From the IMG/VR virus record IMGVR_UViG_3300032242_003291, positions 62,001-126,000 of that record: DNA of 64,000 nt, one strand, 5' to 3'. Each line of letters begins with the position of its first letter. Position 1 is the stretch's first letter. Below the pieces are notes generated by a model. It had not been told where the DNA came from. It was given only the letters and a program-made list of their open reading frames with translations, and did no database searches. Positions 1 to 63,617 of this stretch are shown here, piece after piece. The position numbers and the translations under genes were made by a program.

Positions 1-1066
1 TATCCAAGTCTTGGAATTCAGTTGCCTTCTTATATTTTCCATTTTGGATGTTTAACCAATATTCTTCTTTGTTGGTATACATTTTACCAATACTCTCGTG
101 TTCGATATATACACGGTCAGGAGCTTCAGCGTTGATATACTTTGTAATGTACTTCAAACCTGCGGCTTTGATACTTGAATTGATTGCTTGTGCTCTACGA
201 ACAGCGTGAATAATATCGATAACGTTATAACCCCAAATTGAAGTCTGAATATAATCTTCGACTTCATTTGCAAGTTTTAATATTGTTTCTTTTCTTGTGA
301 ACGAGTGTTGGGGATGTAATGAATGACAAGCCTTCTTTGGGTCAACACCTAATATTCTACATCTTTCAAATATCCAATGCCAGTCGAAGTTTGCGGAGTT
401 GTATCCACCAATAATACTTGGTTTGATTTCATCAATCACTTTGAAGAATTCAATGATGGCATTCTTCTCCTGAGACTCATCTATACACTCAATTACTCGG
501 TGGTACCCTTTATTCGTTTTGATTCCAATCATGAAAATACGACCATCCTTAGGGTCAAGAGCAGTCGTTTCTAAGTCGAATACAAGTCTGGTAACTTGCT
601 CATAGTCTTCAAAACCTTTGAATAATCTTTTTTCTTTTGAAATTAAGTATTGTTCTACAGGAGGTAGAATCATTATTTTGTCTTTGGATTTTTCACCCCA
701 AGGGTCACAACCACCATCTCTGAAGAATTGAATAAGTTCTCTATATCCTTTAAGAGATTTAACAATATAAGTTAAACCTTTCTCAAGTCTTTCATTACCC
801 TTTGTATCAAGTTTTTCAATCATGATACCATATTTGGACATTGCTTCTTTTTGTGCTGCTTTGGAGTCGCTATAAAATTTTAATCCTCGTAAGTCACCTA
901 CCCAAGCAAATGGGATAAATGTATCCTTACGGATTTCTTTACCTTTGCCAGGTATTTCTTTGATTTTGTAAATTGAATTGGATGCGTAGTCGAACTCGAT
1001 TGCGACTATAAATTCTTCAGGGTCATTACCATGTAAGAATGATTCTATCTCTTCATTAGATATCAT
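1..1066 (-). CDS. Family B DNA polymerase, N-terminal part with 3'-5' exonuclease domain (runs off the left edge; absent from ORF track)
   Basis: Manual translation from ATG at 1066: MISNEEIESFLHGNDPEEF... open to position 1. Contains ExoI VFDLETT and ExoII GGYNSANFDW motifs. Confidence 0.85.
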   Translation of the reverse strand, partial: MISNEEIESFLHGNDPEEFIVAIEFDYASNSIYKIKEIPGKGKEIRKDTFIPFAWVGDLRGLKFYSDSKAAQKEAMSKYGIMIEKLDTKGNERLEKGLTYIVKSLKGYRELIQFFRDGGCDPWGEKSKDKIMILPPVEQYLISKEKRLFKGFEDYEQVTRLVFDLETTALDPKDGRIFMIGIKTNKGYHRVIECIDESQEKNAIIEFFKVIDEIKPSIIGGYNSANFDWHWIFERCRILGVDPKKACHSLHPQHSFTRKETILKLANEVEDYIQTSIWGYNVIDIIHAVRRAQAINSSIKAAGLKYITKYINAEAPDRVYIEHESIGKMYTNKEEYWLNIQNGKYKKATEFQDLD

Positions 1067-1157
1067 AAAATATATTTTTAGATTGGTGTATTAGCTTTCA
1101 CAATACGTGAAATTTACCTTCTTCTATAAATATAAAAAATCTTACTAACTAATCAAA

Positions 1158-1535: not shown

Positions 1536-1551
1536 AACAATAAATATATTG

Positions 1552-6177: not shown

Positions 6178-7272
6178 TTACGTATGTGATGGTGTTGGTG
6201 TTGGAGTGTGACTTGTTGTTACGGTTGGTGTTGGGGTGTGAGATGCGGTTGGTGTTGGTGTTGGGGTGTGCGATGCAGTTGGTGTTGGTGTTACACTACA
6301 AAGTGTGCTGTATCCAAGAGTTGCCCCTGTTGCACATCCAATACCGCAATCATTATTTACATAGTAAACTATACCATCAAGAGCGTACCATCCATCAGGA
6401 TTTCCTGTGTTTACACCACCTGGGTCAGAGAAGAATAATGTTGATGCACTAAATTGAGGATGGTTAGTCCAAATCGTTGCATTAGTACTACAACTACAAG
6501 CTTCATCAGCACTTGACTCACTATGACATAAAGAAGTGTGAACGTATCTTGCTGGTTCTGTTGTTGATGGTGTAACTGTCGGTGTTGGAGTTGCAGTTGC
6601 TGTTTGTGTTATTGTTGGTGTAGGTGTTACTAAGTTAGCACATCCTGAAGTGTATTTTCCTGTAACTTCACCGAATCCACCTGATACAACATATAATATT
6701 GTTCCATCAGAGTAGTATCCGTCAGTAGCTCGGAATGTAGTTGTTGAATTAGTATATAATATTTCTGATACTTCAATTGTTGGTCCACCTGACCTTGTAC
6801 CATAATAAGCTGTTTCAGTTGCTCCACAAGCATCGTTTGGTGTTACACCATATCCCAATTGGAATTGATAATTGATTGCTGTTGGTGTAGGTGTTGGTGT
6901 TACCGCTGCCGTTCCTGTTTGAGTTGGTGTAGGTGTTGGTGTTGCTGCTGCCGTTTCTGTTGGAGTTGGTGTTGCCGCTGCCGTTCCTGTTTGAGTTGGT
7001 GTTATACTTGGTGTAGGAGTATTAGTTGGTGTTGTTGTTGGAGTTGGTGTAGGTGTTGCAGTCGCATAAAGTGGAGGGAAAGTTCCTGTATTAACCAATG
7101 CAATTGAGTGGTTAAATGCTGTTGAATAAGTCCCGTTAATCAACCAAATGCTTTTAGTTTCTCCTGGTAATAGTTCAACTTGGTATTCCCACATTGAATC
7201 ATCGCATCTTCTATAATTAAAATTAGTTATAGTAGAGCCTGTATTTGTTACGATATATTTGCTACACGCCAT
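6178..7272 (-). CDS. Mucin-like Thr/Pro-repeat protein with Cys-bracketed beta domains (putative virion surface protein)
   Basis: 364 aa; three globular segments separated by (TP)n linkers; TATTTAT motif 16 nt upstream. Confidence 0.75.
   Translation of the reverse strand: MACSKYIVTNTGSTITNFNYRRCDDSMWEYQVELLPGETKSIWLINGTYSTAFNHSIALVNTGTFPPLYATATPTPTPTTTPTNTPTPSITPTQTGTAAATPTPTETAAATPTPTPTQTGTAAVTPTPTPTAINYQFQLGYGVTPNDACGATETAYYGTRSGGPTIEVSEILYTNSTTTFRATDGYYSDGTILYVVSGGFGEVTGKYTSGCANLVTPTPTITQTATATPTPTVTPSTTEPARYVHTSLCHSESSADEACSCSTNATIWTNHPQFSASTLFFSDPGGVNTGNPDGWYALDGIVYYVNNDCGIGCATGATLGYSTLCSVTPTPTASHTPTPTPTASHTPTPTVTTSHTPTPTPSHT
6628..6876 (-). repeat. 83-codon domain duplicated at 7802..8050
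   Basis: INYQFQLGYGVTPNDAC...YGTRSGGPTIEV...VVSGGFGEVTGKY..GC.NLV occurs in both genes, with many synonymous differences. Confidence 0.9.
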
Positions 7273-7339
7273 TTTTTTATGTTTTCTAATAAATACTACG
7301 AATTACTCTAATTTATTTTTTAGAATATAAAAAATGTTA

Positions 7340-8458
7340 TTAAATACATGAAAAAGGTGAACCAACCACAAAACCATTACTGTTCAATTCAAGAACTGTA
7401 TTAGTGACAGAATAGAATCCTGTCATGTTAATTGTAACAGGTCCTGTACTATTATTATAAAATTGTGTATTGATACCGAAGTTTGGTGAATCACCATAAA
7501 TTAAAACAGCACTGAATTGTGAACAAGCATCTGCAAAATTAGTTCCTGAGTAAGATAAGAATGCATATCTTCTATGTGTTGGCGTTGGCGTTGGTGTGTT
7601 AGATGATGTAATACTTGGTGTTGGCGTATTAGTAGAAGTAACACTTGGTGTTACCGTCACTGTTGGAGTATTAGTTGGTGTTTCAGTATTAGTTGGTGTT
7701 AATGTATTAGTAGGAGTTGGCGTTGGTGTTGATGTTTCTGTTACAGACGGAGTTGGTGTTGGTGTATTTGTTGTTGTTTGTGTTACTGTTGGCGTTGGTG
7801 TTACTAAATTAAGGCAACCATTATTATATTTCCCTGTAACTTCACCAAATCCACCTGATACAACGTATAGTATTGTTCCTTCTGAATAGTATCCATCAGG
7901 TGCTGGAGTAGTTACACTTGCATTTGTGTATAAAATTTCAGTAACCTCAATAGTTGGTCCACCTGACCTTGTACCATAGAAATCAGTATTGAATGTTGAA
8001 CAAGCCTCATTTGGTGTAAATCCATACCCTAACTCAAATTGATAATTTATTGAAGTTGGCGTTTGGGTTAAAGTTGGAGTAGGTGTTGGTGTTTCAGAAC
8101 TTGTAATTGTTGGTGTTGGAGTTTCCGTATTTGTTGGAGTATTAGTTGGAGTCTCTGTAGTTGTTGGAGTTTGAGTTGGTGTTTCAGTATTTGTTGGTGT
8201 TAAATATAAAGTTTCTGTGGGAGTTACTGTTGGTGTTGGAGTTGGTGTCGGAGATGGACAAGGAATACTGATTACATATGTATAAGCATATGTTGATACG
8301 TAACAATCATAATTTCCATACCAATAATCAGTAACATACGTAAATGGGAAAGTTTGTGTTCCTAAATCAATTGTTCCACCAGAACAAGGAAAAAAGGTAA
8401 CATTTGCAGTTTGACCGCTTAAATTATCACTAAAAATTGAAACTCCACAATATGACAT
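7340..8458 (-). CDS. Mucin-like Thr/Pro-repeat protein, paralogue of 6178..7272
   Basis: 372 aa; two long TPT linkers; shares the 83-aa domain; TATTTAT 5 nt upstream. Confidence 0.75.
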   Translation of the reverse strand: MSYCGVSIFSDNLSGQTANVTFFPCSGGTIDLGTQTFPFTYVTDYWYGNYDCYVSTYAYTYVISIPCPSPTPTPTPTVTPTETLYLTPTNTETPTQTPTTTETPTNTPTNTETPTPTITSSETPTPTPTLTQTPTSINYQFELGYGFTPNEACSTFNTDFYGTRSGGPTIEVTEILYTNASVTTPAPDGYYSEGTILYVVSGGFGEVTGKYNNGCLNLVTPTPTVTQTTTNTPTPTPSVTETSTPTPTPTNTLTPTNTETPTNTPTVTVTPSVTSTNTPTPSITSSNTPTPTPTHRRYAFLSYSGTNFADACSQFSAVLIYGDSPNFGINTQFYNNSTGPVTINMTGFYSVTNTVLELNSNGFVVGSPFSCI

Positions 8459-8488
8459 AATATATAAATACTTAAAAAAAATGTTTTA

Positions 8489-9044: not shown

Positions 9045-11747
9045 TTATATAAATTGTCCGTGATAATTTGATAAGTTGTATTCCAAACTTGTTATATTTT
9101 CCCCATCAATACAGTTACCCATTAATTCTAAAGTTACTACTGTACCGTTCGAAACTGCCCCATGTGCCGCAGTAAATCCTACATTAATAAATGTATATTC
9201 ATCAGGTACTGCAACCATAGTACCTCCTTTATATAATACGGCCTGAATGTAAACAGGATTAGAACCTACGGTTCCGTACCACGCAGCATTAGTTGTTATT
9301 GTGATTACATTTTGACTCGGATAGTCGTTTTTGAATTGAATTAAGTCGATTAAAACTGATTCAAACCCTACACCTGTATTATCTCCACCCCAAGTGAGGA
9401 TTGGAGCACCTGAAGGGTATTCAAAAGAACAACACCATCCTATATAATCAGAAAGATTATTTTGTCCAATATCAGGAACCGTAACTCTTGTCCTTGTATC
9501 TAAATCTGTTCCGTCATTGAATGCATATGTCACAACAATATAATCCGCATCAAACACAAAACCACCAGGTACAAAAGGTATTGGTGTTGGCGTTGGAGTT
9601 GGAGTAGATTCTGGTGTTTCACTTAATGTCACCGAAGGTGTTTGTGTTGGTGTTGGCGTAGGATTTTGAGTAGACCCAATAGACGGAGTTGGAGTTGGTG
9701 TTTCGGTATTTGTCGGTGTTAAAGTTGGTGTTGGCGTAGGATTTTGAGTAGACCCAATTGTTGGTGTTGGGGTTGGTGTTGGAGGACAATTATATAAATC
9801 ATATCCCAAGTCATTACAAGGTAACGACAGATAAATTAAATCATTACAAGGTAACGTTAGGTAATATATGTCATTACTAGGCGTCGTAACCCTACAGTTA
9901 GGACAATCAGGGTCTAAAAGATTATATCTATTTTTTAATATTCTGAAGTTATGTTTAACTTGGGATGCGTTTAATGGTTCGGTGTACATTCTGAATGCAC
10001 TAATATCACCAATTAAACTACCACCAAATATTTCTTCAAGTTTTATATGAGTTGTTAGACCAGAATAAATTGTGTGGTCTAAGTCATGTGTAGTTAAAGA
10101 TTCGGGGTCTTGTTGGTAAACAATATCATTAACGGTATCAGGACATCCTCCTGAAAAAGTTAAGTTGTCGTGAAGGCCTTGAGTACCACCCCCAACTGAA
10201 ATGTTATATCCAACACCAATTTGTTTTTCTTTTGGTGTATTCAATAATCTTGGAATGATTTCTTCAAAATTTTCAGCAACCATAAACAACTTACCGTTAA
10301 CATAAAACTTCAATGTTCCGAGTCTATATTTTTGTTCCTCAGTCCACATATCAGTAAATGTTACAATTTCAGTAGTTGCAGGGTTATAATCTTTTTCGTG
10401 TGTGATTGGAGGTTCAATTAAACTTACACTATTGTTGGCTGGCGTTGCAGTAAAAATTGTATCAACAATTAATCCAAGTCCACCTTTCATATTCAAATCA
10501 CAAGGGTCGAACCATTCATTTCTTTGAAATACTGCGTCAATCTGAACCCAATGTTCCACATTCACATATGGTGTTTTAATACAATTATCAAATATACCTC
10601 TTGTAGAACACCACTCACTCACAGTAGTTCCTGTTTCATACGTCAATCCTGTAAGACAAGTTCCACTTGTTTCACATCCTCCAGTCATTCTATATGTCTT
10701 AACACATAACCTTGGATTACCAGTTTCCCCACTCAATCTTAGAGATAGACCATTTGACATACCGTCAAATGTTGGGTCAGTTTCAGGATATTTCACTGTT
10801 GTAGAACAATTACAAGGACAACCACAACTACAATTTGTTGATGTTCCTCCTGATTGTTGATATACATCAATACAGCTATGCTCTGCGGTTTTTCCTGTTT
10901 GTTCACATTCACAAGTGTGCATACAAGTTAAACCTGAAGTTACCCTTGTATATCCCGTATCTTGTGACGGACTACCGTCAGGGTAGTGATAAAATTTATT
11001 TTCAGCACGAGCTCCTAAATAAAAAAACGTACCTTTATTTTCAGGATATCTTTTATTTAATCCGAAATCAGTATTACCTGTCCACCTATATCTTAACATG
11101 AATTCCGCAGTCCAACCAAGAGAAGGTCTCTGTGGATATATTTGATAATCATAACCAGGTAGTTTGTAAAACCCTTGATAAAATCCTCCTTCTAATCTTG
11201 AAAAATACCCAACTGAATCACTGTCGGTGTGGTATTCCAAAGTATAGTCATAAGACCCGTCATTCCATAATCTATTGTCTGAAGTTGTAAATCCTGTAAT
11301 AGGGTGCAACTTCATTCTTCTGTCGTATTTGTATCTACTATATGTGTCAGCAGATGATGTATATAGTCCTGTAGTTATTTCAATTGTTTCACCTGACATT
11401 TTTTTAACCAAACCATTGTCAATACCTGTTAAACCTACATCACATAATTCAGTTGTAATTGGACAAAAGTTTGGGTCAACATCAACAGGATTCCAATAAT
11501 TTTCAGAGACAATAATGTCGTTATCGAAACTACAAGAATTATCTTGACAAATCGTTGTTGCAGAGTTATTCAAGTCAAATTTGAATGGCATTCTATTACC
11601 ATCATTCTCTCCAATTAGAAGTGGCGAAAATACAACCTCTTGGTCATAATCTTTTTCATCAGATGCAAGACAAATGTCTGTTATTTCATTAACAGGTTTA
11701 AGACCCCACCTTCTGTAATTATATTGATTAATGTTTTGATATGCCAT
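9045..11747 (-). CDS. Large Cys-rich protein with LamG/ConA-like lectin-fold segment and Thr/Pro linker (putative virion protein)
   Basis: 900 aa; [46 protein letters not shown] are LamG-like motifs; PTPT linker near the C-terminus. Confidence 0.6.
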
Positions 11748-11756
11748 AAACTAATG

Positions 11757-11783
11757 ATAAATACCTTGTATCCGAGTATTTAT
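11757..11783. promoter_or_regulatory. Back-to-back putative late promoters (TATTTAT on each coding strand) at a divergent junction
   Basis: ATAAATA 11757-11763 serves the minus gene at 11747; TATTTAT 11777-11783 serves the plus gene at 11800. The same motif precedes at least 20 genes in the window. Confidence 0.65.
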
Positions 11784-28238: not shown

Positions 28239-28509
28239 TGTTTTAGGAGAAAATTATTACATCGACTTAGATGTAATTGAAAAATATTTGGATATGAGTG
28301 ATTCTGAGCCAATTGAACCTGTGTCAGGTTCTACTGAAATGAGAATCAACATCATAAAATTTGAAATGGTAAAAATGTTACTTGAAACTGTTCTTAGTGA
28401 ATCTTTCGGTGAAGATGAAAAATTAGGAATGAAAAATTCGGCAACATCAATACCATTCAGGATAGCATTTAACAGTTTATTAAATAAAAAATTAATCAAT
28501 CACTACTAA
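28231..28509 (+). CDS. Hypothetical phage protein
   Basis: 92-aa ORF in the operon. Confidence 0.6.
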   Translation: MISVLGENYYIDLDVIEKYLDMSDSEPIEPVSGSTEMRINIIKFEMVKMLLETVLSESFGEDEKLGMKNSATSIPFRIAFNSLLNKKLINHY

Positions 28510-28510
28510 T

Positions 28511-29563
28511 ATGGAAAATTCATTAAAAGACAAAGTATTAAAGTCCATCGAGATATTAAAAGACAAACAAGCTAGATTATATTTCTTAGTTCAAGACACT
28601 AAGGGAAATGCAAAAGCTTCTGTTAGATTTATATATCAAGTGGCAAAAACATTAAAGGAAAATGGTTTCAATCCCATTCTACTACACGAAAAGAAAGACT
28701 ATGCAGGGGTTGCCGCATGGTTAGATGAGGAATATATGAAATTACCTCACAGAGTAATCGAAGGTCAAAATTTAGAAATTTCACCAGAAGATTTTTTAAT
28801 TATCCCTGAGATTTTTGCGTTTATGATGGACCAAGTGAAACAACTACCTTGTGCAAAAATTGTGTTAGCACAATCTTATGCATATATTGTTGAAACTTTA
28901 CAACCAGGTCAAAACTGGGCACAATATGGTTTTTTTAAATGTATCACAACAACAAACAATCAAAAAGAATATATTGAAAAGGTAATGAGACAATCAAGTT
29001 TTGATATAATTAAACCGTATATAACTGAAAGTTTTTACCCTAAATCGGTACCCCCGATGCCAATTATTGGTGTTCACACAAAAGAGCAAAGCGATGCTGT
29101 TAACATTATCAAAACATTTTATTTGAAATTTCCACAATATAGATGGTTCACTTTCAGAGATTTGAGAGGTCTCTCAGAAAGGGAATTTTCAAATTCACTA
29201 AGAGACTGTTTTGTAAGTGTTTGGATTGATGATGAAAGTGGATTTGGTACTTTTCCGTTAGAATCTATGAAATCTAATGTACCTGTAATTGGTAAGATAC
29301 CAAACTTAAAAGCTGAGTGGATGACTGAAGAAAATGGAATTTGGATTACTGACAAAACACTATTTGCTGATGTTATTGCAGACTTTATACAAAATTGGTT
29401 AGAGGATAATATCAAACCTGAACTTTATGACGAAATGAAGAAAACAGTCGAACCTTATACTAATAAACAAGAATTTGATAATTCTGTTGTTAACTTATTT
29501 AGTAGTTACTTAGAAAACAGAGGAAAATCATTTGAAGAACAATTAAACAAAACCGAAGAATAA
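28511..29563 (+). CDS. GT4-like (GT-B) glycosyltransferase
   Basis: DFLIIPE, FVSVWID..SGFGTFPLESM, VPVIG. Confidence 0.7.
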   Translation: MENSLKDKVLKSIEILKDKQARLYFLVQDTKGNAKASVRFIYQVAKTLKENGFNPILLHEKKDYAGVAAWLDEEYMKLPHRVIEGQNLEISPEDFLIIPEIFAFMMDQVKQLPCAKIVLAQSYAYIVETLQPGQNWAQYGFFKCITTTNNQKEYIEKVMRQSSFDIIKPYITESFYPKSVPPMPIIGVHTKEQSDAVNIIKTFYLKFPQYRWFTFRDLRGLSEREFSNSLRDCFVSVWIDDESGFGTFPLESMKSNVPVIGKIPNLKAEWMTEENGIWITDKTLFADVIADFIQNWLEDNIKPELYDEMKKTVEPYTNKQEFDNSVVNLFSSYLENRGKSFEEQLNKTEE

Positions 29564-29564
29564 C

Positions 29565-30371
29565 ATGGAAAATAAATTATCATTATCAGTTATATTACCA
29601 ATTAAATCATCCAAAGCGAGAAACTTTGATGAATATTTTCAAAAAGCAATAGATTCTTTGAAAAACCAAAAAGTTGAATTTGAAGAATTGGTAATTGTTC
29701 ATACTTTAGAAGAATCATTAATATCATTATTAGAAACATATGATTTTGGTAACTTAACTGTTACAAAAGTTTTATGGGATAAAGAACCAAATTACTGCTC
29801 ACAAGTTAATTTTGGAATTGAAAAGGCAAGAGGTCAGTGGGTTTCCTTGTTTGAATTTGATGATGAATACTCATCAATATGGTTCAAAAATGTTAAAACA
29901 TATATTAATTCATATCCAGAAACACAAATGTTTTTACCTGTAGTTGTTGAGACGGATGAAAAAGGTATGTTTGCTGGTTTTACAAACGAAGCAACATTTG
30001 CAGCTAATTTTACTCAAGAAATGGGTACATTAACAAATGAAACATTACACGACTATCAAAATTTTCAAACTGCTGGTAGTGTAATTAAAAAACAAGTGAT
30101 TGAAGATTTCGGTGGATTCAAACCATCAGTAAAACTGACATTTGTATACGAATTCTTATTAAGACTTACATATAATTCAGTTTCAGTAATGACAATACCA
30201 AAACTTGGATACAAACATACTAATCTAAGAGAAGGTTCAATCTTTTGGAATTATAAGAACGGTGACGTAAAAATGTTAGAAGATGAAGTAAAATTTTGGA
30301 TTCAAACCGCAAAAAAGGAATATTTTTTCACCGACGATAGAGTCATAAAATATCAATCAGAAAATGTATAA
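29565..30371 (+). CDS. GT2-like (GT-A) glycosyltransferase
   Basis: LSVILPI, NFGIEKA, SLFEFDDEY, YEFLLRL, GYKHTN. Confidence 0.7.
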   Translation: MENKLSLSVILPIKSSKARNFDEYFQKAIDSLKNQKVEFEELVIVHTLEESLISLLETYDFGNLTVTKVLWDKEPNYCSQVNFGIEKARGQWVSLFEFDDEYSSIWFKNVKTYINSYPETQMFLPVVVETDEKGMFAGFTNEATFAANFTQEMGTLTNETLHDYQNFQTAGSVIKKQVIEDFGGFKPSVKLTFVYEFLLRLTYNSVSVMTIPKLGYKHTNLREGSIFWNYKNGDVKMLEDEVKFWIQTAKKEYFFTDDRVIKYQSENV

Positions 30372-31153
30372 TGACAGAAACAATCTCTGCATCAACAGAG
30401 GATGTTTTATCTGAAACATTCTCTGCAACGACGGAAGATGTTTTATCAAAAAAAAGAGGTAGGAAGGCAGTTAAAGAAAATTATTTTGACATTCGAGAAG
30501 AAACTGCGGTTAGAAATTTTTTAGTCGCGGAAACTTATGAAGAAAAAAATAAAATATATAATCAATATCTTCGTGCACCTTTAGATAAGATGATTTCATC
30601 AATTATTAGACGATATAAATTATATCGTAAGGATATGGAATTTAATGAAATCCATACGGATACTCATTCATTCTTAATGACAAAGGTTGATAAGTTCAAA
30701 CCAGATAAAAATAAAAAAGCTTATTCATATTTTGGTACTATTTGTAAAAATTACTTAATGGGTCAAATTATCAAAGACCAAAAAGAAACAAATAGAAAAA
30801 TTTCATACGAAGATATTTCATCAAGTATTGAAGAAAGACCTGATTTGGTCTATCGAATAGATGATGATATTGTAGAAACTGATGTAATTATTGTTCAATA
30901 TCTAAAAGAATTACGTGAGTTCATCGAAACAGAAAACTTAAACGAAAATGAAAAGAAACTAGGATATGCTTTAATTGATTTGTTTGATAACTATGAAACT
31001 ATTTTTTCTGGTGCTGATAATAACAAATTTAACAAAAATGTTATTTTACTTTCTTTGAGAGAAATGACAAATTTAAGTACAAAAGAAATTAGAAGTTCCA
31101 TTAAAAGATTCAAAAAACTTTATTTAATTATTCAATTTAAGATGAAAAACTAA
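30371..31153 (+). CDS. T4 gp55-like late-transcription sigma factor
   Basis: KENYF, LDKMISSIIRRY, KFKPDKNKKAYSYFGTICKNYL (region-2-like); 260 aa; no recognisable host-type region 4. Confidence 0.65.
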   Translation: MTETISASTEDVLSETFSATTEDVLSKKRGRKAVKENYFDIREETAVRNFLVAETYEEKNKIYNQYLRAPLDKMISSIIRRYKLYRKDMEFNEIHTDTHSFLMTKVDKFKPDKNKKAYSYFGTICKNYLMGQIIKDQKETNRKISYEDISSSIEERPDLVYRIDDDIVETDVIIVQYLKELREFIETENLNENEKKLGYALIDLFDNYETIFSGADNNKFNKNVILLSLREMTNLSTKEIRSSIKRFKKLYLIIQFKMKN

Positions 31154-31171
31154 ATAAAAGTATTTATAGAT

Positions 31172-31537
31172 ATGCCAAGACCATTACGAAAAGAAATTAA
31201 TTTTACAAAAGATTCAATTTTGTCTCTATTACAAGAGATTTACAATGAACTTGTTGAACAAAGACAAACTGCAATTAGAATTCAAAATAAAATGTTGTCT
31301 ATGTTAAAAGACCCTACCGACATGGTAACTATCGGTCCTGTTATTGAAAAACAACAAAAAATTGTAAATGATTGTGTCGAGAAAAAAATTAGTCTTTCTA
31401 AATTACAATCAAGTATTTGGGAGAAATCAAATGCAAATACGGAATCATTTTCTCTTGCAGATTTGGATGATGACTTAATTCAAAATCTCATAGAGAAAGA
31501 TGTTTCTAATGATGAAGAAACATATAAAATGAAGTAA
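31172..31537 (+). CDS. Hypothetical phage protein (coiled coil)
   Basis: 121 aa; TATTTAT-N4-ATG. Confidence 0.65.
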   Translation: MPRPLRKEINFTKDSILSLLQEIYNELVEQRQTAIRIQNKMLSMLKDPTDMVTIGPVIEKQQKIVNDCVEKKISLSKLQSSIWEKSNANTESFSLADLDDDLIQNLIEKDVSNDEETYKMK

Positions 31538-35379: not shown

Positions 35380-36882
35380 ATGTCAATTTTAAGGTCATAC
35401 ATAGATAAGAATAATACGATTATTTCTAATTCATATACAAATACGGCTCGTAACCCTATTATTGAATTGAATTTTGGTGCTTCGGATTATATCATTCCTA
35501 ACTACGGATACACAAGGTTTATATTTGAATTAAACCTTTCATTACTTAGAGAAAATATTCAATCAGGTGTCATCACAACAGGTTGTACTGATAATATGAC
35601 TCACGTTTTGAAGATGACAAATACATCTTCATTTGACAATGAATTACTTAATTCTTTCATGTCCAATGAAAGAAGAAGAGCAACTTCATTTGATTTAATT
35701 TTATTCAGAATACCACAAACATCAGGAGATACTGGAAACCCACAATATTGGGATGAAGGTGTTGGATACGATTACAACGATTTTAACATTACCAAAAATA
35801 GTGCCCAAGGTGGTTCAACCCCACTTACATATGTAGATAGTAGAGCATTCTCTAATAGACCATCCAACTGGTATCAAACAACAACAATTAATAAATGGTC
35901 TCAACCTGGTATCTACAATAACAAAAACGAAGGATTGGTTAATTTTTCAGGTCTTACAATCATAGCAAGACAACATTTCCAACTTGGAAATGAAGACCTT
36001 AATATGGATATGACAAACGAGATTAATGGAATCTTAGATGGAACTATCACAGGAGTTACAGGCTGGGGAGTTGCTTATTTACCTGAAATTGAAAACATTA
36101 CAGGTTTAACTGACAGTTATAGTGTTGCATTCTTTTCAAAATATACACAAACATTTTATCAACCGTACCTTTTAACAAACTATAATGACTTAATTCAAGA
36201 CGATAGAAACATTTTCTTAAAAAGTCAGGAAAATAAATTGTTTCTGTACGTTTATCAAAATGGTGATTTAGTTAATTTAGATTCAGACCCATTTGTTAGA
36301 ATAGAAGATAGAACAGGTCTTGAGGTTTCGGGAATGGCAAGTTTGAGTACTTGTCCAAGAACAAAAGGTGTTTATGAAGTAGTAGTACCAAATGGTTTCC
36401 AAAATAGTCCAACTCCTTGCGTATTTTATGACGTATGGTCAGGATTAACAATTAACGGACAACCTCTTCCAAATGTCAGAAACCAATTTACACTACAACA
36501 ATATACCGCAGGAATTCAAATAGGTTCTGTATCTAAAGAACCACAAAAGTTTGGTTTTGATTTTTATGGTATATTACAAAACGAGCAAATTTTGGCTTCG
36601 GATATACGAAAGGTTGGGGTTACAATTAAAAAAGCCTATACAGGTCAACAAGTATTACAAAATGTTTCAGCATTTTATAGAGTTTATGTAAAAGAAGGAA
36701 CAACTGAAGTTCAAGTTCAAGATTGGACACCAATCAATAGAACACCAAATGAATACTATTTTATATTTGATATGAGAGACAAAATACCAAATCAATATTA
36801 TGTCGACATTCAAGTGAATACTTCAGGAGAGAAAGATACTTATAAGAAACAATTAACATTTAACATAGTGAACGTAAAATGA
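35380..36882 (+). CDS. Putative virion structural protein
   Basis: 500 aa, beta-rich; SFDL...WDEGVGYDY motif; TATTTAT 12 nt upstream. Confidence 0.6.
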   Translation: MSILRSYIDKNNTIISNSYTNTARNPIIELNFGASDYIIPNYGYTRFIFELNLSLLRENIQSGVITTGCTDNMTHVLKMTNTSSFDNELLNSFMSNERRRATSFDLILFRIPQTSGDTGNPQYWDEGVGYDYNDFNITKNSAQGGSTPLTYVDSRAFSNRPSNWYQTTTINKWSQPGIYNNKNEGLVNFSGLTIIARQHFQLGNEDLNMDMTNEINGILDGTITGVTGWGVAYLPEIENITGLTDSYSVAFFSKYTQTFYQPYLLTNYNDLIQDDRNIFLKSQENKLFLYVYQNGDLVNLDSDPFVRIEDRTGLEVSGMASLSTCPRTKGVYEVVVPNGFQNSPTPCVFYDVWSGLTINGQPLPNVRNQFTLQQYTAGIQIGSVSKEPQKFGFDFYGILQNEQILASDIRKVGVTIKKAYTGQQVLQNVSAFYRVYVKEGTTEVQVQDWTPINRTPNEYYFIFDMRDKIPNQYYVDIQVNTSGEKDTYKKQLTFNIVNVK

Positions 36883-37346: not shown

Positions 37347-37414
37347 AGTTTTTAAAAGGTTAAAATATTTTAACCTTTTTTTGTAATTTAATGTTTAGCC
37401 ATATATTTATTGAT

Positions 37415-37901: not shown

Positions 37902-38309
37902 ATGGAAAACAAAGTTGTAGGGTATATACCCCGTTTATTATTTAGAATTTATTTGAGTCTAAAAGAAAAATTTGACCCAACCCCACCTATTCCCGAAGAA
38001 GAAAGAATTACCGTAGAAATATGTAAAAAGTTAATTAATGACCCTGAGTCAAAATTAACTTACGCACCAATCTCAAACAAAAGATTTATCAAAAACGAAG
38101 AAAAAAGTATGTTTATCGTCATTGAACAACATACAATTAATCTTATTAATCACGTATATAGTTACTCGGTTTATTTGTCCAACTCAAATGATTACAACGA
38201 AATAATTACTAGCTTTGATAAAGTATTAGAATTTGAAAGACAATCCTTAGAAGATGAGATTAGAAGTAATATACAGCATTCTTTAACTACTATATTAGAA
38301 AAACTTTAA
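37902..38309 (+). CDS. Hypothetical phage protein
   Basis: 135-aa ORF. Confidence 0.6.
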   Translation: MENKVVGYIPRLLFRIYLSLKEKFDPTPPIPEEERITVEICKKLINDPESKLTYAPISNKRFIKNEEKSMFIVIEQHTINLINHVYSYSVYLSNSNDYNEIITSFDKVLEFERQSLEDEIRSNIQHSLTTILEKL

Positions 38310-38986
38310 TTAAAATTTTCTCTGATGACTCTCCTGATTATATCAGTTAGTTGTTCATTTTTTGGTTTGTAAGTAACCATTTTGGGCTTATTTCCTGTAC
38401 CTGACTTAGAATGAGTTTTTTCAGCCTTTCTTTTTTGTTGACACGCTGATTTTTTTTGGGATACAGACATTTTAGATGCAATGCCAGCGGCCCTACATTT
38501 AGGGTACCCCTTATCTTCGGCGTGTGACCTACCACAGGGAGGATGTTTTCCGTTTACCTTTCTACATATATTAACCCATGGACCTGCAGGTTGTTTACTG
38601 CCTTTGGGTTTTTTCTTTGTTCCGAACCAAACACCTAAATCTTCTCTAAACAATTCTTCTTTAATATTACTTGGTAATTGAACCTCATCTTGTCCAATAT
38701 CCCCACCATCATCATCGTTTTGATTTGTATAGAATTTTTTTAAATAATCATCAATTTCTGCAACTTTATCTGTTCTTGACTCAATACGTGCTCTTTCCTC
38801 AGGACTTTCTTTATAATCATCATCAGCTTCTTCATATGCCAGCTCAGCATTTTTATATTTATAAACTGGTTCAGTAAAAGGTCCTAATTGGTCATCCTTC
38901 CAAAGTTGTGGTGCCAGAACAATAGGAACTTTGAATTTTCCTGAACTTGATGCACCTGTGGCTTCATTTATTCGTCTTTTATTCAT
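38306..38986 (-). CDS. Hypothetical protein with basic Cys-rich module
   Basis: EDLGVWF...PWVNIC...PPCGR...YPKC...KMS...RK..EK; TATTTAT 8 nt upstream. Confidence 0.62.
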   Translation of the reverse strand: MNKRRINEATGASSSGKFKVPIVLAPQLWKDDQLGPFTEPVYKYKNAELAYEEADDDYKESPEERARIESRTDKVAEIDDYLKKFYTNQNDDDGGDIGQDEVQLPSNIKEELFREDLGVWFGTKKKPKGSKQPAGPWVNICRKVNGKHPPCGRSHAEDKGYPKCRAAGIASKMSVSQKKSACQQKRKAEKTHSKSGTGNKPKMVTYKPKNEQLTDIIRRVIRENFN

Positions 38987-39008
38987 ATATTACTATAAAT
39001 ATACTACT

Positions 39009-40281: not shown

Positions 40282-42093
40282 TTATCTCAATTCTTTTAAG
40301 TCGAATGTTCTTACGCCATCAACTGTGATTCTACCGTAGAATCTGTTGTTCACCATCTTCTTAGCGTATCTAGTCATGATACCTTTGATTGGTGTGAAGT
40401 TGAACGGATTGTACATTGTAGGAGTAAGTTGTAATGGAACGTATGGTGCGTAGATGTAACCTGTATCTAACAAAGAAGTACCTTTGTGACCCATTAACAC
40501 TTGGTTTGGTGGGAAGTAAGGGTCTCTGTAAACTTGGTATCTACCAGCTAATGTACCAACTCTTTCAATACCCATGTTGTATTGGTCTTGCTCAGGAGCT
40601 GCATTTGAAACGTGGAAATACTCCAAGTCATCAAAGATAGCACTGATTTCAGAAGAAACAACTATCCAGTTAGCACCACCTCTTAAAGTAGACTTATGGA
40701 TTTGTGCAGAAATTTGGTTGATTGCTGTGATTAACGTTTGGTTCCAGTCTTTTTGTGTGTAAGGTTGTGCCTGACCACCAAGTCTCTTCCATCCGTTGTA
40801 ATCCCATCTTAAGTTCCAAGCTGCACCTTTTCTTAAATCTCTCAAGATTTCTCTATCGATTTCAGCAGCAACTTGCTCAGATAATAATGCTGTTAATTCA
40901 GCTTCAGCGTCGATGTTGTGGAAAGCCGCAACGTCTTGAGCCATTTCAGGAGACCATTGTGCTCTTAATTTTCTTTCAGTTACAGAAACTGTTACTGACA
41001 TTAAGTCAAATGAAACCTCACCAATTTTATCTTCAAATTCTAAGTTCTTATAGATTCTATAAGTAGCTGAGAACGCGTTGTTAGTCGCTGTAGAAGAAGA
41101 GAATGTAGAACCTGTGTAACCGTCCATAGAACCGCCACAAGTAATACATACTGGTACTTGTAAATCAACCTCTAAGTAGATGAATCCTTGTGCATCACAG
41201 ATGTTGTCATATTGACCACCATCAGTTAATGAGTTAGGGAATACTAATGTAGTGTTGTTGTTACCGTATTGAACGATACCTTTACCATATCTTTGAGTTA
41301 CAACTCTGAATAAGTAAGGACCACCGCCTGCAGTTGTAGTGTTTGTAGAAACACCATTGATTGTTAAATCAGCTAAGAAAGACTCAGTATCCATTGGTTG
41401 ACCGTCTGGACCGATTAACTTACCAGCTCCATCAGATGCGAAACCTGACATGATAACTAATACTTTTCTGTAATCAGTTAATGCGTAAGCTGCTGGTTCT
41501 AAATTTAATGTTGTGCTATTCCATTGTGCAGTAACAACTGAAGTGTTTGCAGATGTAATAGAACTGAATTGTCCTTTAGAATAGTCATATAAACCTGGAG
41601 GGTCTAATGCTGGTTCAGCACCTTCGTAGAATCTATCGTAAAGGTCTCTACCTGTATTATAGTCATAACCTGCGTTAGGTGATGCTGGACCGTTTGGTGC
41701 TCCAAAAGGTGAATAATGAATACCAGTGTTGTCGTTTTGACCACCACCTACTTCATATTGTTGAATGTTTGGTACAAAGTAGAATAATTTACCGATTGGT
41801 AAGTTCATAGCTTGTACTGAAACGATATCGTTAGCTAACAATTTAGAGAAAACTCTTCTTACGATTGGAAATACAACAGTTTCAAATGCACCTGTGTCAG
41901 ATGTAGATGAAGCTTCGTTGATTAAGAAAGACGCTTGGTTTTCATATAATTGTGCTACGTTTTCTCTCATGTGACCTTTAAGACCTTCTAAAAAGCCTAA
42001 TTTGTCCCATTTGTTGATTGTATCTTCTTTGATAACTTTAAGGTGCTTAAGACCGATGTTACCAACAAGACCTGATTCTAATAATGCTCCCAT
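40282..42093 (-). CDS. Major capsid protein, T4 gp23-like
   Basis: IVRRVF, VSVQAMNLPIGKLFY, VTERKLRAQWS.E.AQD...H.IDAE.EL, EIDREI, YAPYVPL, GIMTRY. Confidence 0.95.
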   Translation of the reverse strand: MGALLESGLVGNIGLKHLKVIKEDTINKWDKLGFLEGLKGHMRENVAQLYENQASFLINEASSTSDTGAFETVVFPIVRRVFSKLLANDIVSVQAMNLPIGKLFYFVPNIQQYEVGGGQNDNTGIHYSPFGAPNGPASPNAGYDYNTGRDLYDRFYEGAEPALDPPGLYDYSKGQFSSITSANTSVVTAQWNSTTLNLEPAAYALTDYRKVLVIMSGFASDGAGKLIGPDGQPMDTESFLADLTINGVSTNTTTAGGGPYLFRVVTQRYGKGIVQYGNNNTTLVFPNSLTDGGQYDNICDAQGFIYLEVDLQVPVCITCGGSMDGYTGSTFSSSTATNNAFSATYRIYKNLEFEDKIGEVSFDLMSVTVSVTERKLRAQWSPEMAQDVAAFHNIDAEAELTALLSEQVAAEIDREILRDLRKGAAWNLRWDYNGWKRLGGQAQPYTQKDWNQTLITAINQISAQIHKSTLRGGANWIVVSSEISAIFDDLEYFHVSNAAPEQDQYNMGIERVGTLAGRYQVYRDPYFPPNQVLMGHKGTSLLDTGYIYAPYVPLQLTPTMYNPFNFTPIKGIMTRYAKKMVNNRFYGRITVDGVRTFDLKELR

Positions 42094-42124: not shown

Positions 42125-43738
42125 TTAACCTAATTTACCCATCAAGTCCTTCATTCTTAAGAATTGAGGATTCTCATAAGTTTTTGATTCAATTAAGGTT
42201 GTTGAAGAACCAGAAGAAACTTGTTTGTTTAATTTAACTTCCACTGACTCGTTCATTGGTTTTGATTCTGTTTTTGCTAACTCGTCTTTCAAAGACTTAT
42301 AAAGATTTTTAGATTCTTTCAAAGTTTCAACATTGTCAAATCTTCTAAGAATATTAATTTTTTCTTTTTTAGTTGTTGAATGTTCAGTAAACAATCTTGT
42401 AGCATATGCCAAGTTGGAATTGAATATCGCAACTTCATTAAGTTTTTCTCTGAAAACATTTAATGCTTTTCTATATTCTTCATTCTTTTCTCTTAACATT
42501 TTGACTTCAATATCAACAGATTCTTTTTTGATAGCAGTATTTGCTTTAGAATGAGCTCTTGGTTTTGGTAAACCACCCTTTCTAAAATTACTACCCATTC
42601 CTAAAGTTCTTGCTTCTTCTTTCGTTTCCGCCTTTTTGATAACTTTAGATTTTCCTTCCATATTTGCACCTTTCTTGTATTCGAATTTAGCCTTGCCAGT
42701 TCCCATTGTTTTAGGTCCTTCTTTTTTATCTTCTTTGAAACCACCTTTACCAGTTGATTTGTAAGAAAACTTAGGGCCATGACCAAGTCCAACACCTTTA
42801 GGTTTTTTTACTCCTAATTTTTTAGCCTCTTTAATTGAGTTGTAAGATTCTTCCATTTCATCAGATTCATCCATTTCGTCATAAGACTCCTCCATTTCAT
42901 CGGACTCATCCATTTCGTCAGCTTCATCTAAATCATCAGCTTCATCTAAATCATCAGATTCATCTAAATCATCAGACTCATCCATTTCATCAGACTCATC
43001 CATTTCATCAGACTCATCCATTTCATCAGACTCATCCATTTCATCAGCTTCATCTAAATCATCAGACTCATCCATTTCATCAGCTTCATCTAAATCATCA
43101 GCTTCATCGAATTCGATTTCGTACATAACTTCATCGCTGTCCATCTCATCTTGGTCAACATCAAAATCTGAAGTTTTACCATCTTTTGAGAAAATTGCGT
43201 CAATAACATCTTGTGTATCAACGTCGTGTTGTTCTTTAATTTTCATTTTTTTGTTTAAGGGTTTTTCTTCAGACTCACCAAGTTTAACTAGATATTCTAC
43301 ATCAGCATCATTATCTTTTAAATGAACGTTGTCACCATCTTTTTTCACGATGATTCCATCTTCTTCACCCATAGCTTTGAATACTTTAAGAATTTCTTCG
43401 TCAGACGCGTCAGTTAAATCTATCGGAGAATCTTCGGAATCCATGTCCATATCCATGTCCATGTCATCCACATTATCTGCATCCATATCTACATCATCAG
43501 AATCCATATCCATGTCAACATCTGTGTCAACATCTGTGTCTTCGTCATCAGTATCAATATCAGCATCTACGTCAACCTCATCATCAGTTTGTTCTGAAAG
43601 AGATTCTTTTACTAATTGATTGATTTCTTGCTTCATTGTAGCAGCAAGTATTCCTTTTGCATTTTCGGCTATCGCTTCTTCAACGTTTTTCATTTGAATT
43701 AGGGCCTCTTCTACTGGATTTTTCTTAGTATCTTGCAT
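42125..43738 (-). CDS. Prohead core scaffolding protein (gp22-like position), extremely acidic
   Basis: Lies between protease and MCP; coiled-coil C-terminus (LNEVAIFNSNLAY...RFD.VET.KE); long D/E tracts. Confidence 0.75.
   Translation of the reverse strand: MQDTKKNPVEEALIQMKNVEEAIAENAKGILAATMKQEINQLVKESLSEQTDDEVDVDADIDTDDEDTDVDTDVDMDMDSDDVDMDADNVDDMDMDMDMDSEDSPIDLTDASDEEILKVFKAMGEEDGIIVKKDGDNVHLKDNDADVEYLVKLGESEEKPLNKKMKIKEQHDVDTQDVIDAIFSKDGKTSDFDVDQDEMDSDEVMYEIEFDEADDLDEADEMDESDDLDEADEMDESDEMDESDEMDESDEMDESDDLDESDDLDEADDLDEADEMDESDEMEESYDEMDESDEMEESYNSIKEAKKLGVKKPKGVGLGHGPKFSYKSTGKGGFKEDKKEGPKTMGTGKAKFEYKKGANMEGKSKVIKKAETKEEARTLGMGSNFRKGGLPKPRAHSKANTAIKKESVDIEVKMLREKNEEYRKALNVFREKLNEVAIFNSNLAYATRLFTEHSTTKKEKINILRRFDNVETLKESKNLYKSLKDELAKTESKPMNESVEVKLNKQVSSGSSTTLIESKTYENPQFLRMKDLMGKLG
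42842..43108 (-). repeat. Coding 18-nt tandem repeat, about 14 x D-E-[AS]-D-[DE]-[LM]
   Basis: Units such as TCATCAGACTCATCCATT on the plus strand; 89 codons in total. Confidence 0.92.
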
Positions 43739-43794
43739 GAAAAATTTTAATTATTTAATGATAAATAGTATCCTACTTGAAAAAAGTTGATTTT

Positions 43795-44118
43795 TTATAG
43801 TTGAACAAACGTTCTTTTTTGAAGTGATATGTTTTGAACTGACATATCTGTTTGTGCTTCAACCCATTTATTAACGTTTGAATAAGTATCATAAATGATG
43901 TATGTCGATATTGTATTTGTAATAGTATCTTTCAATCCAACATTATATGATTCGTCAGAAGACGAATTAACAAGGATAAGTGTTTGTTGTTGAATATTGA
44001 TTGATTGAATAATACTTCCTGTACCTTCTGCCCATGATGTACAATCTCCCCATGTGTTGCCGCTTACTAAAGATGCATTTCCAATACCACTAGTTTGTAA
44101 ACTTACGCTAAATAACAT
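43795..44118 (-). CDS. Hypothetical protein
   Basis: 107 aa, with its own TATTTAT motifs at 44135 and 44147. Confidence 0.55.
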   Translation of the reverse strand: MLFSVSLQTSGIGNASLVSGNTWGDCTSWAEGTGSIIQSINIQQQTLILVNSSSDESYNVGLKDTITNTISTYIIYDTYSNVNKWVEAQTDMSVQNISLQKRTFVQL

Positions 44119-44156
44119 ATTTTTATAATTTACTATAAATATGTCTATAAATAAAA

Positions 44157-44396: not shown

Positions 44397-45113
44397 TTAT
44401 TTTCCCAAAAAATCGGTTAATTTCTTCATTAAGTCAATAGACTTATCCATTCCTGTAGATTCTTGTTTAATTCTTCTCTCTTCATCTAAGTTTTCTTCAT
44501 ATTTGTCCCTATCCTCAACGTTTGAAAATAAATAAGCTCCTGGTGTTGATGGTGATGATACTAAGTCAAAACAAATTAATTCAAAATCATCTTGTACTTC
44601 ATTTCTTTCTCCCACTTTTTTGAGAGAACCCACACCTCTTGAAGATATACCTAAAGTAACCCCTTGTCTCATCAAGTTTGCCGCTTGGTCTCCTTTAGTA
44701 GAAACAATACCTCTTTCGTGAAAACCTGGTGAAGTTAATAATTTAAGTTTACCCATTAAAATATTTTTATCCCACCATATATCAGTAATAATATGAGATA
44801 CTCTATCTAAGTCTATTAAAGAGGATTCAGGATGATTTAATTCGGATGTTGATAATCCTTTGGCAATTGCCTTTTTATAGTTATCGGCTTCTCTTTTTAA
44901 TATTTGTTCGGGATAAAATCTACCATTTCTGTTTGGTGTATTATATTTTTGAAGAACCGCATAAAATTCGAATGGGTTTCTATAGTCCATGTTTGCCGCT
45001 TCTTTTAATATATCAGCGTTGAGTCTATCTTTTGGAGATATATAACCAGCATCCATTTCAACTAAAATACCGTGACCAACTTCGCTAGCCTCTAAAATTC
45101 TTAAATTTTTCAT
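44397..45113 (-). CDS. Prohead protease, T4 gp21-like
   Basis: NRNGRFYP, SELNHP, LGISSRGVGS, FDLVSSPSTPGA. Confidence 0.93.
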   Translation of the reverse strand: MKNLRILEASEVGHGILVEMDAGYISPKDRLNADILKEAANMDYRNPFEFYAVLQKYNTPNRNGRFYPEQILKREADNYKKAIAKGLSTSELNHPESSLIDLDRVSHIITDIWWDKNILMGKLKLLTSPGFHERGIVSTKGDQAANLMRQGVTLGISSRGVGSLKKVGERNEVQDDFELICFDLVSSPSTPGAYLFSNVEDRDKYEENLDEERRIKQESTGMDKSIDLMKKLTDFLGK

Positions 45114-45149
45114 CTAATCTTTTATGATAAATATATGATATACCGTAGT

Positions 45150-46563: not shown

Positions 46564-46584
46564 CTTAATATTTTTCTATAAATA

Positions 46585-48465: not shown

Positions 48466-48502
48466 ATTACAATTTTACTTATTACCTTGATAATATAAAT
48501 AG

Positions 48503-55215: not shown

Positions 55216-55236
55216 CCTTAATAAATACTACAAACC

Positions 55237-61231: not shown

Positions 61232-61252
61232 TAAACATAAATATAATTTTTG

Positions 61253-61283
61253 TTTGGAATTTCAATATTTATCATTATCTTTG
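61253..61283 (+). promoter_or_regulatory. Bacteroidota-type promoter with embedded TATTTAT motif, driving tmRNA
   Basis: TTTG(61253)-N19-TATCTTTG(61276). The core AATATTTATCATTATCTTTGT recurs at about 62334-62354. Confidence 0.75.
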
Positions 61284-63602: not shown

Positions 63603-63617
63603 AAGGTATTTATGAAT

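What the first reader, a model, noticed from the sequence alone, without database searches (positions are those of the whole stretch)
11757..11783. Genome-wide late-promoter candidate TATTTAT is the reverse complement of the T4 late promoter
Seen: TATTTAT on the coding strand just before the ATG of genes starting at 1535, 7272, 8458, 11747, 11800, 31172, 35380, 37415, 38986, 43738, 44118, 45113, 46563, 48465, 54425, 55215, 55780, 61231, 62262 and 63618, mostly at operon heads of structural or endonuclease genes. Established: the T4 gp55 promoter is TATAAATA on the coding strand, and its reverse complement is TATTTATA. Here the orientation is consistently inverted, suggesting the gp55-like sigma at 30371 reads a different -10 element.
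Basis: partly seen in the sequence, partly recalled or inferred. Interest (0 to 1): 0.6.

Follow-up and report, generated by a model that had tools for sequence, protein, structure and literature searches.

The report
Phage-specific promoter box TATTTAT
A short DNA word, TATTTAT, sits just before about a quarter of the genes of a 317-kb T4-related phage and its relatives. It is most likely the promoter read by the phage's own divergent sigma factor: a variant of the classic T4 late promoter, not an inverted copy of it.

Summary
All 20 listed sites exist. TATTTAT is not over-represented in the window as a whole (40 found, 40 expected). It is, however, strongly strand- and position-specific: 20 sense hits lie within 45 nt upstream of genes against 3.1±1.8 in shuffles. 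Genome-wide the figures are 96 against 14.9±3.9.

The exact 7-mer is kept at 38 of 41 orthologous upstream regions in a relative averaging 62% protein identity. At the reported locus it is unchanged in 44 distinct relatives while the flanks vary.

It behaves as a -10-like promoter core. It has no -35/-33 partner and often follows a terminator. A is favoured 11-13 nt after the motif's first base. In about 40% of sites the ATG sits exactly there, so those mRNAs would be leaderless.

The same genome also carries ordinary Bacteroidota promoters (TTTG...TAnnTTTG) as a separate class.

ORF 30371/30407-31153 has a sigma region-2 domain and a weak likeness to T4 gp55. Its family co-occurs with TATTTAT or TATTTAA in three distant cultured phages, one of which infects a cyanobacterium.

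"Inverted orientation" is not supported: in the same orientation TATTTATA differs from T4's TATAAATA at only two central bases. "Late" is only partly right, because the DNA polymerase gene also carries the motif. No transcript data could be obtained.

The parts
11757..11763 (-). TATTTAT box serving the 900-aa gene 9045-11747 (starts 16 nt before its ATG)
   Evidence: Unchanged in 44 distinct relatives' sequences while the spacer between the two boxes varies.
11777..11783 (+). TATTTAT box at the head of the long plus-strand gene block that starts at 11800 (starts 23 nt before the ATG)
   Evidence: Position kept at -22 to -25 in relatives whose protein is 53-84% identical.
1540..1546 (-). Box 11 nt before the ATG at 1535 (leaderless-type spacing)
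   Evidence: Same spacing in the G001 ortholog.
1126..1132 (-). Box 66 nt before the DNA polymerase B gene (2-1066, minus strand), followed by a conserved leader hairpin
   Evidence: Box and hairpin are both kept in G001.
7289..7295 (-). Box before gene 6178-7272. A sister site at 8464-8470 (minus) precedes gene 7340-8458.
   Evidence: The two genes are paralogs (phrog_15511).
30371..31153 (+). Sigma-like gene, the candidate reader of the box. Most homologs were called from the ATG at 30407 (248 aa). The ATG at 30371 overlaps the upstream stop codon (TAATG) in nearly all relatives.
31161..31167 (+). Box 11 nt before the 121-aa ORF 31172-31537, directly after the sigma-like gene
   Evidence: Present in 66 of 71 distinct related contigs, with the ATG 10-13 nt after the box start. 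A box lies 21 nt before the gene in the same position (78906-79256) in phage immuto.
35361..35367 (+). Box 19 nt before gene 35380-36882
   Evidence: Kept in G001 at -21.
37404..37410 (+). Box 11 nt before the ATG at 37415, just after a hairpin and T-run
38995..39001 (-). Box 15 nt before gene 38306-38986
43761..43767 (-). Box at the head of the operon 42125-43738 plus the gp23-type major capsid gene 40282-42093
   Evidence: Kept in G001. The capsid gene has no box of its own.
44135..44153 (-). Two boxes 12 nt apart before gene 43795-44118, directly after a terminator hairpin
45127..45133 (-). Box 20 nt before the gp21-type prohead protease gene 44397-45113
46578..46584 (-). Box 21 nt before gene 45868-46563
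48495..48501 (-). Box 36 nt before the gp20-type portal gene 46585-48465
   Evidence: Kept at -35 in G001. A box also precedes the portal gene of phage immuto.
54445..54451 (-). Box before gene 53976-54425. Further boxes at 55221-55227 and 55786-55792 (both minus) lie 12 nt before the ATGs at 55215 and 55780.
   Evidence: The 55786 box abuts a 12-pair terminator hairpin.
61237..61243 (-). Box 12 nt before gene 59417-61231. A box at 62267-62273 (minus) lies 11 nt before gene 61717-62262.
63607..63613 (+). Box 11 nt before the ATG at 63618
61253..61283 (+). Host-type promoter (TTTG, 19 nt, TATCTTTG) with a TATTTAT (61266-61272) inside its spacer, upstream of the tmRNA gene. A near-copy at 62322-62353 precedes a 53-aa ORF.

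Best explanation
TATTTAT, usually followed by A or T and preceded by a purine, is the -10-like core of a phage-specific promoter class. The phage is a 317-kb member of the T4 superfamily that infects a Bacteroidota host.

The box needs no -35/-33 partner. Transcription is inferred to start at an A, 11-13 nt after the first T of the box. In about 40% of sites that A is the A of the start codon, so those messages would be leaderless. Most of the other sites would give leaders of roughly 5-30 nt.

The class drives the virion genes (portal, protease, capsid operon, tail fibre) and also some DNA-metabolism genes. It is distinct from the host-type promoters (TTTG...TAnnTTTG) that the same genome uses for about 40 other, mostly small, genes.

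The likeliest reader is host core RNA polymerase carrying the phage protein encoded at 30371/30407-31153. This protein is a divergent sigma with a region-2 domain, distantly like T4 gp55.

Shown here: enrichment, polarity, spacing, conservation, co-occurrence with the sigma family, and the sigma fold.
For: Position and strand bias hold against shuffles of the same AT-rich stretches, and TATTTAT is the top 7-mer upstream of genes.

Conservation:
- The exact word is kept at 38 of 41 orthologous upstream regions in genome G001, where the flanks are only 53-62% identical (Fisher p 1e-28).
- It is invariant at the reported locus in 44 distinct relatives.

Not a ribosome-binding signal:
- Only 5 of 151 genes with an upstream gap of 10 nt or less carry it.
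- It often follows terminator hairpins.
- In Microcystis phage Mel-JY01 the same word lies 39-51 nt upstream, with a separate GGAG-like element nearer the ATG.

Geometry:
- Distances from box start to ATG peak at -11/-12 (36 sites) and at -21 to -23.
- A makes up 75-78% of bases at +11 to +13 in sites with leaders, exactly where the ATG's A lies in the -11/-12 class.
- The host-type -7 boxes in this genome show the same geometry.
- In Flavobacterium the start site lies 4-5 nt after the -7 box (PMC6847099).
- No conserved upstream element was seen.

- 37 of 53 family members hit Pfam Sigma70_r2.
- The family profile finds SigA and T4 gp55 in the PDB.
- hhalign against gp55 gives E 1e-4 over 82 columns.
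- Model residues 26-126 superpose on sigma region 2 (Z about 9.5, rmsd 2.5-3.2 A).
- Phage immuto has the motif and this family but no canonical sigma.
- RM378 and Mel-JY01 also have the family, together with TATTTAA and TATTTAT respectively.
Against: - No transcript 5' ends: no RNA run was listed.
- The sigma-like gene has no promoter of its own. It is always fused to the upstream gene, inside a block whose only recognisable promoter is itself a TATTTAT box 18.6 kb upstream. How it is first expressed is unexplained.
- The likeness to gp55 is weak (PDB profile E 0.066; hhalign probability 56%).
- The protein carries an extra C-terminal domain with no clear structural match.
- No gp45-type clamp was found by Pfam, and the family profile shows no likeness to gp33.
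- In the -11 class the start would lie only 3 nt after the 8-mer, one less than in host promoters.
- Some genes that are early or middle in T4, such as the DNA polymerase, carry the motif.
Confidence: 0.72

Rival explanations
1. The box is a promoter, but it is read by the phage's RpoD-like sigma (265 aa, genome position 277416-278213, outside the window). The protein at 30371 would then act later or on other sites.
For: This sigma has regions 2 and 4. It lies in an operon headed by a host-type promoter, so it could be made first. That would resolve how the TATTTAT-driven block holding the other sigma gets transcribed. It is conserved in three complete relatives.
Against: No -35-like partner accompanies the box. 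Phage immuto has the box but no Sigma70_r2 match, whereas it does have the other family. No third motif was found that the protein at 30371 could read.
Confidence: 0.15
2. The box is read by a host sigma factor: the housekeeping one with relaxed specificity or modified by a phage protein, or a host alternative sigma.
For: The box shares T, A, T and T with positions 1, 2, 5 and 7 of the Bacteroidota -7 element and has the same spacing to the ATG (PMC6847099).
Against: The same word is used by a relative that infects a cyanobacterium, and a one-base variant by a Rhodothermus phage. Variants nearer the host consensus are not enriched. The host-type class is a separate set of sites.
Confidence: 0.08
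3. The box is an RNA-level signal, acting as a translation enhancer or ribosome-binding substitute in a host that lacks Shine-Dalgarno pairing, or as a processing site.
For: In the -11/-12 class the box occupies the place of a Shine-Dalgarno element.
Against: It is nearly absent before tightly packed internal genes (5 of 151). There is a second distance mode at -21 to -23, and conserved sites at -36 to -66. In Mel-JY01 it lies 39-51 nt upstream, with its own GGAG-like element closer to the ATG. It abuts terminators.
Confidence: 0.04
4. It is a chance product of AT-rich intergenic DNA.
For: The whole-window count equals expectation. The genome is 33% G+C.
Against: Shuffles of the same upstream stretches give 3.1 against 20 observed. 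There is strand bias, exact-word specificity and conservation across orthologs.
Confidence: 0.01

Closest known systems
T4 late promoter (TATAAATA), read by gp55 with gp33 and the gp45 clamp
   Same: - An 8-bp AT-rich box at the -10 position, with no -35 element and an AT-rich stretch downstream.
- Tens of sites on both strands, before virion genes (PMC2988020).
- The phage has T4-type capsid, portal, protease and terminase genes.
- It also has a sigma with only a region-2 likeness to canonical sigmas.
- Six of the eight bases are identical in the same orientation.
   Different: - Positions 4 and 5 are T, not A. TATAAATA itself is not enriched here.
- The sigma-like protein is 248-260 aa, against 185 for gp55. 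It has an extra C-terminal domain and no obvious clamp-binding tail like that of gp55.
- No gp45 match by Pfam, and no gp33 likeness in the family profile.
- Many sites are fused to the start codon.
- The DNA polymerase gene also carries the box.
Bacteroidota housekeeping promoter (-33 TTTG / -7 TAnnTTTG)
   Same: It starts with TA at about -12, has T at positions 5 and 7, and shows the same distances to the ATG in this genome (PMC6847099).
   Different: It has A instead of T at position 6 and A/T instead of G at position 8. There is no -33 element. The phage carries genuine host-type promoters as a separate set.
Late-promoter variants in other T4 relatives (cyanophage S-PM2, KVP40, Aeh1)
   Same: Consensus drift within the T4 family is already documented, for example at -13/-12 in Aeh1 (PMC2988020).
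   Different: Those variants keep the central AAA. Here the central bases change, and the sigma is far more divergent.

Membership tests
T4-type late promoter | Consensus TATAAATA | tested here: not met
   TATAAATA: 9 sense hits at -30 to -11. TATTTATA: 47.
T4-type late promoter | No conserved -35 element; AT-rich segment downstream of the box | tested here: met
   Information content is near zero from -40 to -16. A-run at +11 to +13.
T4-type late promoter | Box about one helical turn upstream of a mapped RNA start | not testable with these tools
   No RNA run was listed. Spacing to the ATG and the A-run agree with it.
T4-type late promoter | Precedes late (virion) genes only | tested here: inconclusive
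   Found before the portal, protease, capsid operon and tail fibre genes, but also before the DNA polymerase and a methyltransferase.
T4-type late promoter | Depends on gp55, gp33 and the gp45 clamp | tested here: inconclusive
   A gp55-like protein is present. The Pfam gp45 models PF09116 and PF02916 found nothing. gp33 matched nothing in the sigma-family profile and was not searched for genome-wide.
Bacteroidota -33/-7 promoter | T-12, A-11, T-8, T-7, T-6, G-5, plus TTTG near -33 | tested here: not met
   A at the sixth base, A/T at the eighth, no upstream TTTG. The variant TATTTGT is not enriched.
gp55 family (for ORF 30371/30407-31153) | Sigma region-2 domain | tested here: met
   37 of 53 relatives hit PF04542. 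Structural Z is 9-9.5 over 93-99 residues.
gp55 family (for ORF 30371/30407-31153) | Recognisable sequence kinship with gp55 | tested here: inconclusive
   PDB profile E 0.066. hhalign probability 56%, E 1e-4. gp55 is the only hit besides self in a small database (E 1.5e-4).
gp55 family (for ORF 30371/30407-31153) | Small protein with no domains beyond region 2, ending in a clamp-binding motif | tested here: not met
   It has an extra 100-residue helical C-terminal domain. The tail does not resemble that of gp55 (by eye).
Leaderless mRNA | AUG at or within a few nucleotides of the 5' end | not testable with these tools
   Inferred from 36 sites with the ATG 11-12 nt after the box start. That spacing is kept to within 1 nt in most G001 orthologs although the intervening bases differ.

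The most novel reading that the evidence does not exclude
A deep-branching clade of T4-superfamily phages shares two things. Its members are the freshwater jumbo phages, Flavobacterium phage immuto, Microcystis phage Mel-JY01 and Rhodothermus phage RM378.

The first is an unannotated sigma family (gp55-like region 2 plus a new C-terminal domain; more than 1,000 clusters at 50% identity). The second is its own -10-only promoter, TATTTA followed by T or A. This pair works across host phyla. In Bacteroidota and Rhodothermus hosts the promoter is fused to the start codon, giving leaderless or nearly leaderless messages.
Probability: 0.4. Interest if true: 0.65.

Novelty: new variant of a known kind. 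Interest (0 to 1): 0.5.

Why it matters
It would extend the T4 late-transcription model to a large and very abundant environmental phage clade. The sigma family has over 1,000 clusters at 50% identity, and it is labelled 'hypothetical protein' in the two cultured-phage records whose annotation was read (immuto, RM378).

It shows how a minimal sigma and its promoter drift together. It gives an easy rule for marking transcription units in these genomes. It also points to leaderless messages as a phage strategy in hosts that do not use Shine-Dalgarno pairing.

Because a cultured relative (phage immuto on Flavobacterium sp. LMO8) carries both the box and the sigma, the idea can be tested directly.

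Tried and rejected
- RNA evidence: the look-up of sequencing runs listed no RNA run.
- Close relatives among cultured phages: none by DNA, and none with two proteins. Only the portal protein reached distant cultured phages.
- Phage RNA polymerase: no beta, beta' or T7-type match. The control for the T7-type family rang nowhere, so that blank is weak. The giant ORFs gave no PHROG hit.
- Single-sequence searches of the sigma-like protein in Pfam, PHROGs and the PDB were blank or marginal. Only the family profile and the structure model resolved it.
- The C-terminal domain, modelled alone, has no clear match in the PDB. A region-4 identity is therefore not claimed.
- No likeness to gp33 in the family profile, and no gp45 Pfam match.
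- A look-up of a distant family member returned only a 1.5-kb contig.
- No third promoter motif turned up among 87 upstream regions that lack both classes.
- Sigma-70 type promoters are not enriched (74 found against 85.5 in shuffles).
- Pfam gave no function for ten small or medium box-headed genes, so 'endonuclease' is unconfirmed.
- The antisense excess in the 80 related loci was not interpreted, because those loci are not independent.

Full report
**What the window is.** The window is bases 62001-126000 of a single 317,259-bp virus record with 33% G+C, rated complete by CheckV. It encodes a gp23-type major capsid protein (40282-42093, minus strand), a gp20-type portal (46585-48465, minus), a gp21-type prohead protease (44397-45113, minus) and a T4-type large terminase (48503-50260, minus). 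It is therefore a jumbo member of the T4 superfamily. The nearest cultured phages by portal protein are Microcystis phage Mel-JY01 (39%), Flavobacterium phage immuto (38%) and Rhodothermus phage RM378 (35%). No phage RNA polymerase was detected.

**Checking the observation.** The reported interval holds two copies of TATTTAT, one for each of two divergent genes. All 20 listed sites exist. The total count in the window is at chance, 40 against 40.25, so the claim rests on position and strand.
- In the 45 nt upstream of ORFs there are 20 sense hits in the window against 3.1±1.8 in dinucleotide shuffles of those same stretches. Genome-wide the figures are 96 against 14.9±3.9.
- In spacers between genes on the same strand the ratio is 76 sense to 16 antisense.
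- It is the most enriched 7-mer upstream of genes.
- None of its 21 one-base variants shows a sense bias.

**Conservation.**
- At the reported locus both copies are unchanged in 44 distinct sequences from relatives whose adjacent protein is 53-84% identical. The 11 nt or so between the copies, and the bases between box and ATG, vary.
- In a complete relative (G001: 326 kb, 221 reciprocal-best orthologs, mean 62% identity) the same positional peak appears. The exact word is kept at 38 of 41 orthologous upstream regions, although the flanks are only 53-62% identical.
- A box lies directly after the sigma-like gene in 66 of 71 distinct related contigs.

**Anatomy.**
- A purine precedes the box and A or T follows it. 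Nothing is conserved at -35 or -33.
- The distance from the first T to the ATG has two modes: 11-12 nt (36 sites) and 21-23 nt.
- In sites with a leader, A occupies +11 to +13 in 75-78% of cases. That is exactly where the start codon's A lies in the 11-12 class.
- The 11-12 spacing is kept to within 1 nt in most orthologs although the intervening bases differ.
- Many boxes follow hairpin and T-run terminators.
- Only 5 of 151 genes packed within 10 nt of their upstream neighbour carry a box.
- Together these point to a -10-like promoter core that starts transcription at an A about 5-6 nt after the 7-mer, with leaderless messages in the 11-12 class. The start sites are inferred, not measured.

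**A second class in the same genome.** About 40 genes, mostly small and lying at 120-290 kb, are preceded by TTTG, about 19 nt, then TAnnTTTG (often TATCTTTG). This is the Bacteroidota housekeeping promoter, whose start site lies 4-5 nt after the -7 box (PMC6847099). Its presence supports a Bacteroidota host, and it shows the same distances to the ATG as the TATTTAT class. Sigma-70 type promoters are not enriched.

**The sigma-like protein.**
- ORF 30371/30407-31153 alone gave only marginal hits.
- Its family is very large: about 8,000 near relatives, and 1,101 clusters at 50% identity.
- Of 53 diverse members, 37 match Pfam Sigma70_r2.
- The family profile finds SigA proteins (E 0.006-0.018) and T4 gp55 (E 0.066) in the PDB.
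- hhalign against gp55 aligns 82 columns (E 1e-4, probability 56%).
- In a small database, gp55 is the only hit besides the protein itself; the phage's own RpoD-like sigma is not hit.
- The model (pLDDT 88) superposes on sigma region 2 at Z about 9.5.
- The C-terminal 100 residues fold confidently but match nothing clearly.
- The protein is therefore a sigma with a gp55-like core, but not a typical gp55.

**Linking box and sigma.**
- Phage immuto shows the same positional peak of TATTTAT, before its terminase, portal, tail-fibre and virion genes. It encodes a family member (E 6e-36) but has no canonical sigma.
- RM378 encodes a family member (E 7e-14). Its top upstream word is TATTTAA, with 39 of 61 genome copies in sense upstream stretches and 11 of them exactly 13 nt before the ATG.
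- Mel-JY01, whose host is a cyanobacterium, encodes a member (E 7e-30). It uses ATATTTAT 39-51 nt upstream, with a GGAG-like element nearer the ATG.
- The word follows the phage lineage and this sigma family, not the host phylum. Its distance to the ATG changes with the host's mode of translation. This argues for a promoter read by a phage factor and against a ribosome-binding role.

**Relation to T4.** T4 late promoters are an 8-bp box at -10, with an AT-rich stretch downstream, no -35 element, and about 50 sites on both strands (PMC2988020). TATTTATA is the reverse complement of TATAAATA only because the T4 box is nearly palindromic. In the same orientation the two differ at bases 4 and 5 alone. 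Nothing suggests an inverted mechanism. TATAAATA itself is not enriched here.

**Open problems.**
- The sigma-like gene is always fused to the upstream gene and has no recognisable early promoter.
- The phage also has an RpoD-like sigma made from a host-type promoter, which remains a rival reader.
- The DNA polymerase gene carries a conserved box 66 nt upstream, so the class is not strictly late.
- No RNA data were available.

Noticed in passing
window 61304-61700 (+): A phage-encoded tmRNA gene (Rfam RF00023, 80.6 bits, E 1e-29). ARAGORN did not call it. It lies about 20 nt downstream of the promoter at 61253-61283.
   Followed up: partly
window 61253-61283 (+) and 62322-62353 (+): Two near-identical cassettes in which a TATTTAT box sits inside the spacer of a host-type TTTG...TATCTTTG promoter. 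These may be dual-class promoters. One precedes the tmRNA gene, the other a 53-aa Gly/Tyr-rich ORF (62368-62529).
   Followed up: partly
window 1067-1132 (-): The leader of the DNA polymerase B gene holds a hairpin (TTCAC, 5-nt loop, GTGAA) that is conserved in relative G001 together with the box at -66. It may be a translational operator like that of T4 gene 43.
   Followed up: partly
genome G000 277416-278213 (-), locus L001 1078-1875: A second phage sigma of 265 aa, RpoD/RpoS-like with regions 2 and 4. It lies in an operon behind a host-type TATCTTTG box and is conserved in three complete relatives.
   Followed up: partly
window 56445-58457 (+): A ClpB-like double AAA+ chaperone gene in the phage genome.
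   Followed up: no
window about 28500-30371 (+): Two genes with glycosyltransferase matches (29565-30371 family 2; 28511-29563 a weak group 1 hit) lie directly upstream of the sigma-like gene in the same plus-strand block. The nearer one ends in a TAATG overlap with the sigma-like gene that is conserved across relatives.
   Followed up: partly
Flavobacterium phage immuto, NC_055915 (loci L104-L111): Besides TATTTAT, a second variant, TATTTAG, is sense-enriched upstream of genes (20 sense, 5 antisense), for example before the gene block that holds its sigma-like gene. It may be a second promoter class.
   Followed up: no
genome G000 120559-121398 (window 58559-59398, -) versus its G001 ortholog: This ortholog pair differs in promoter class: a host-type TACCTTTG box here, a TATTTAT box in G001.
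   Followed up: no
genome G000 ends (1-100 and 317160-317259) and about 132-134 kb: The record begins and ends inside a repetitive gene. Upstream stretches near 133 kb look like tRNA genes. Neither was examined.
   Followed up: no
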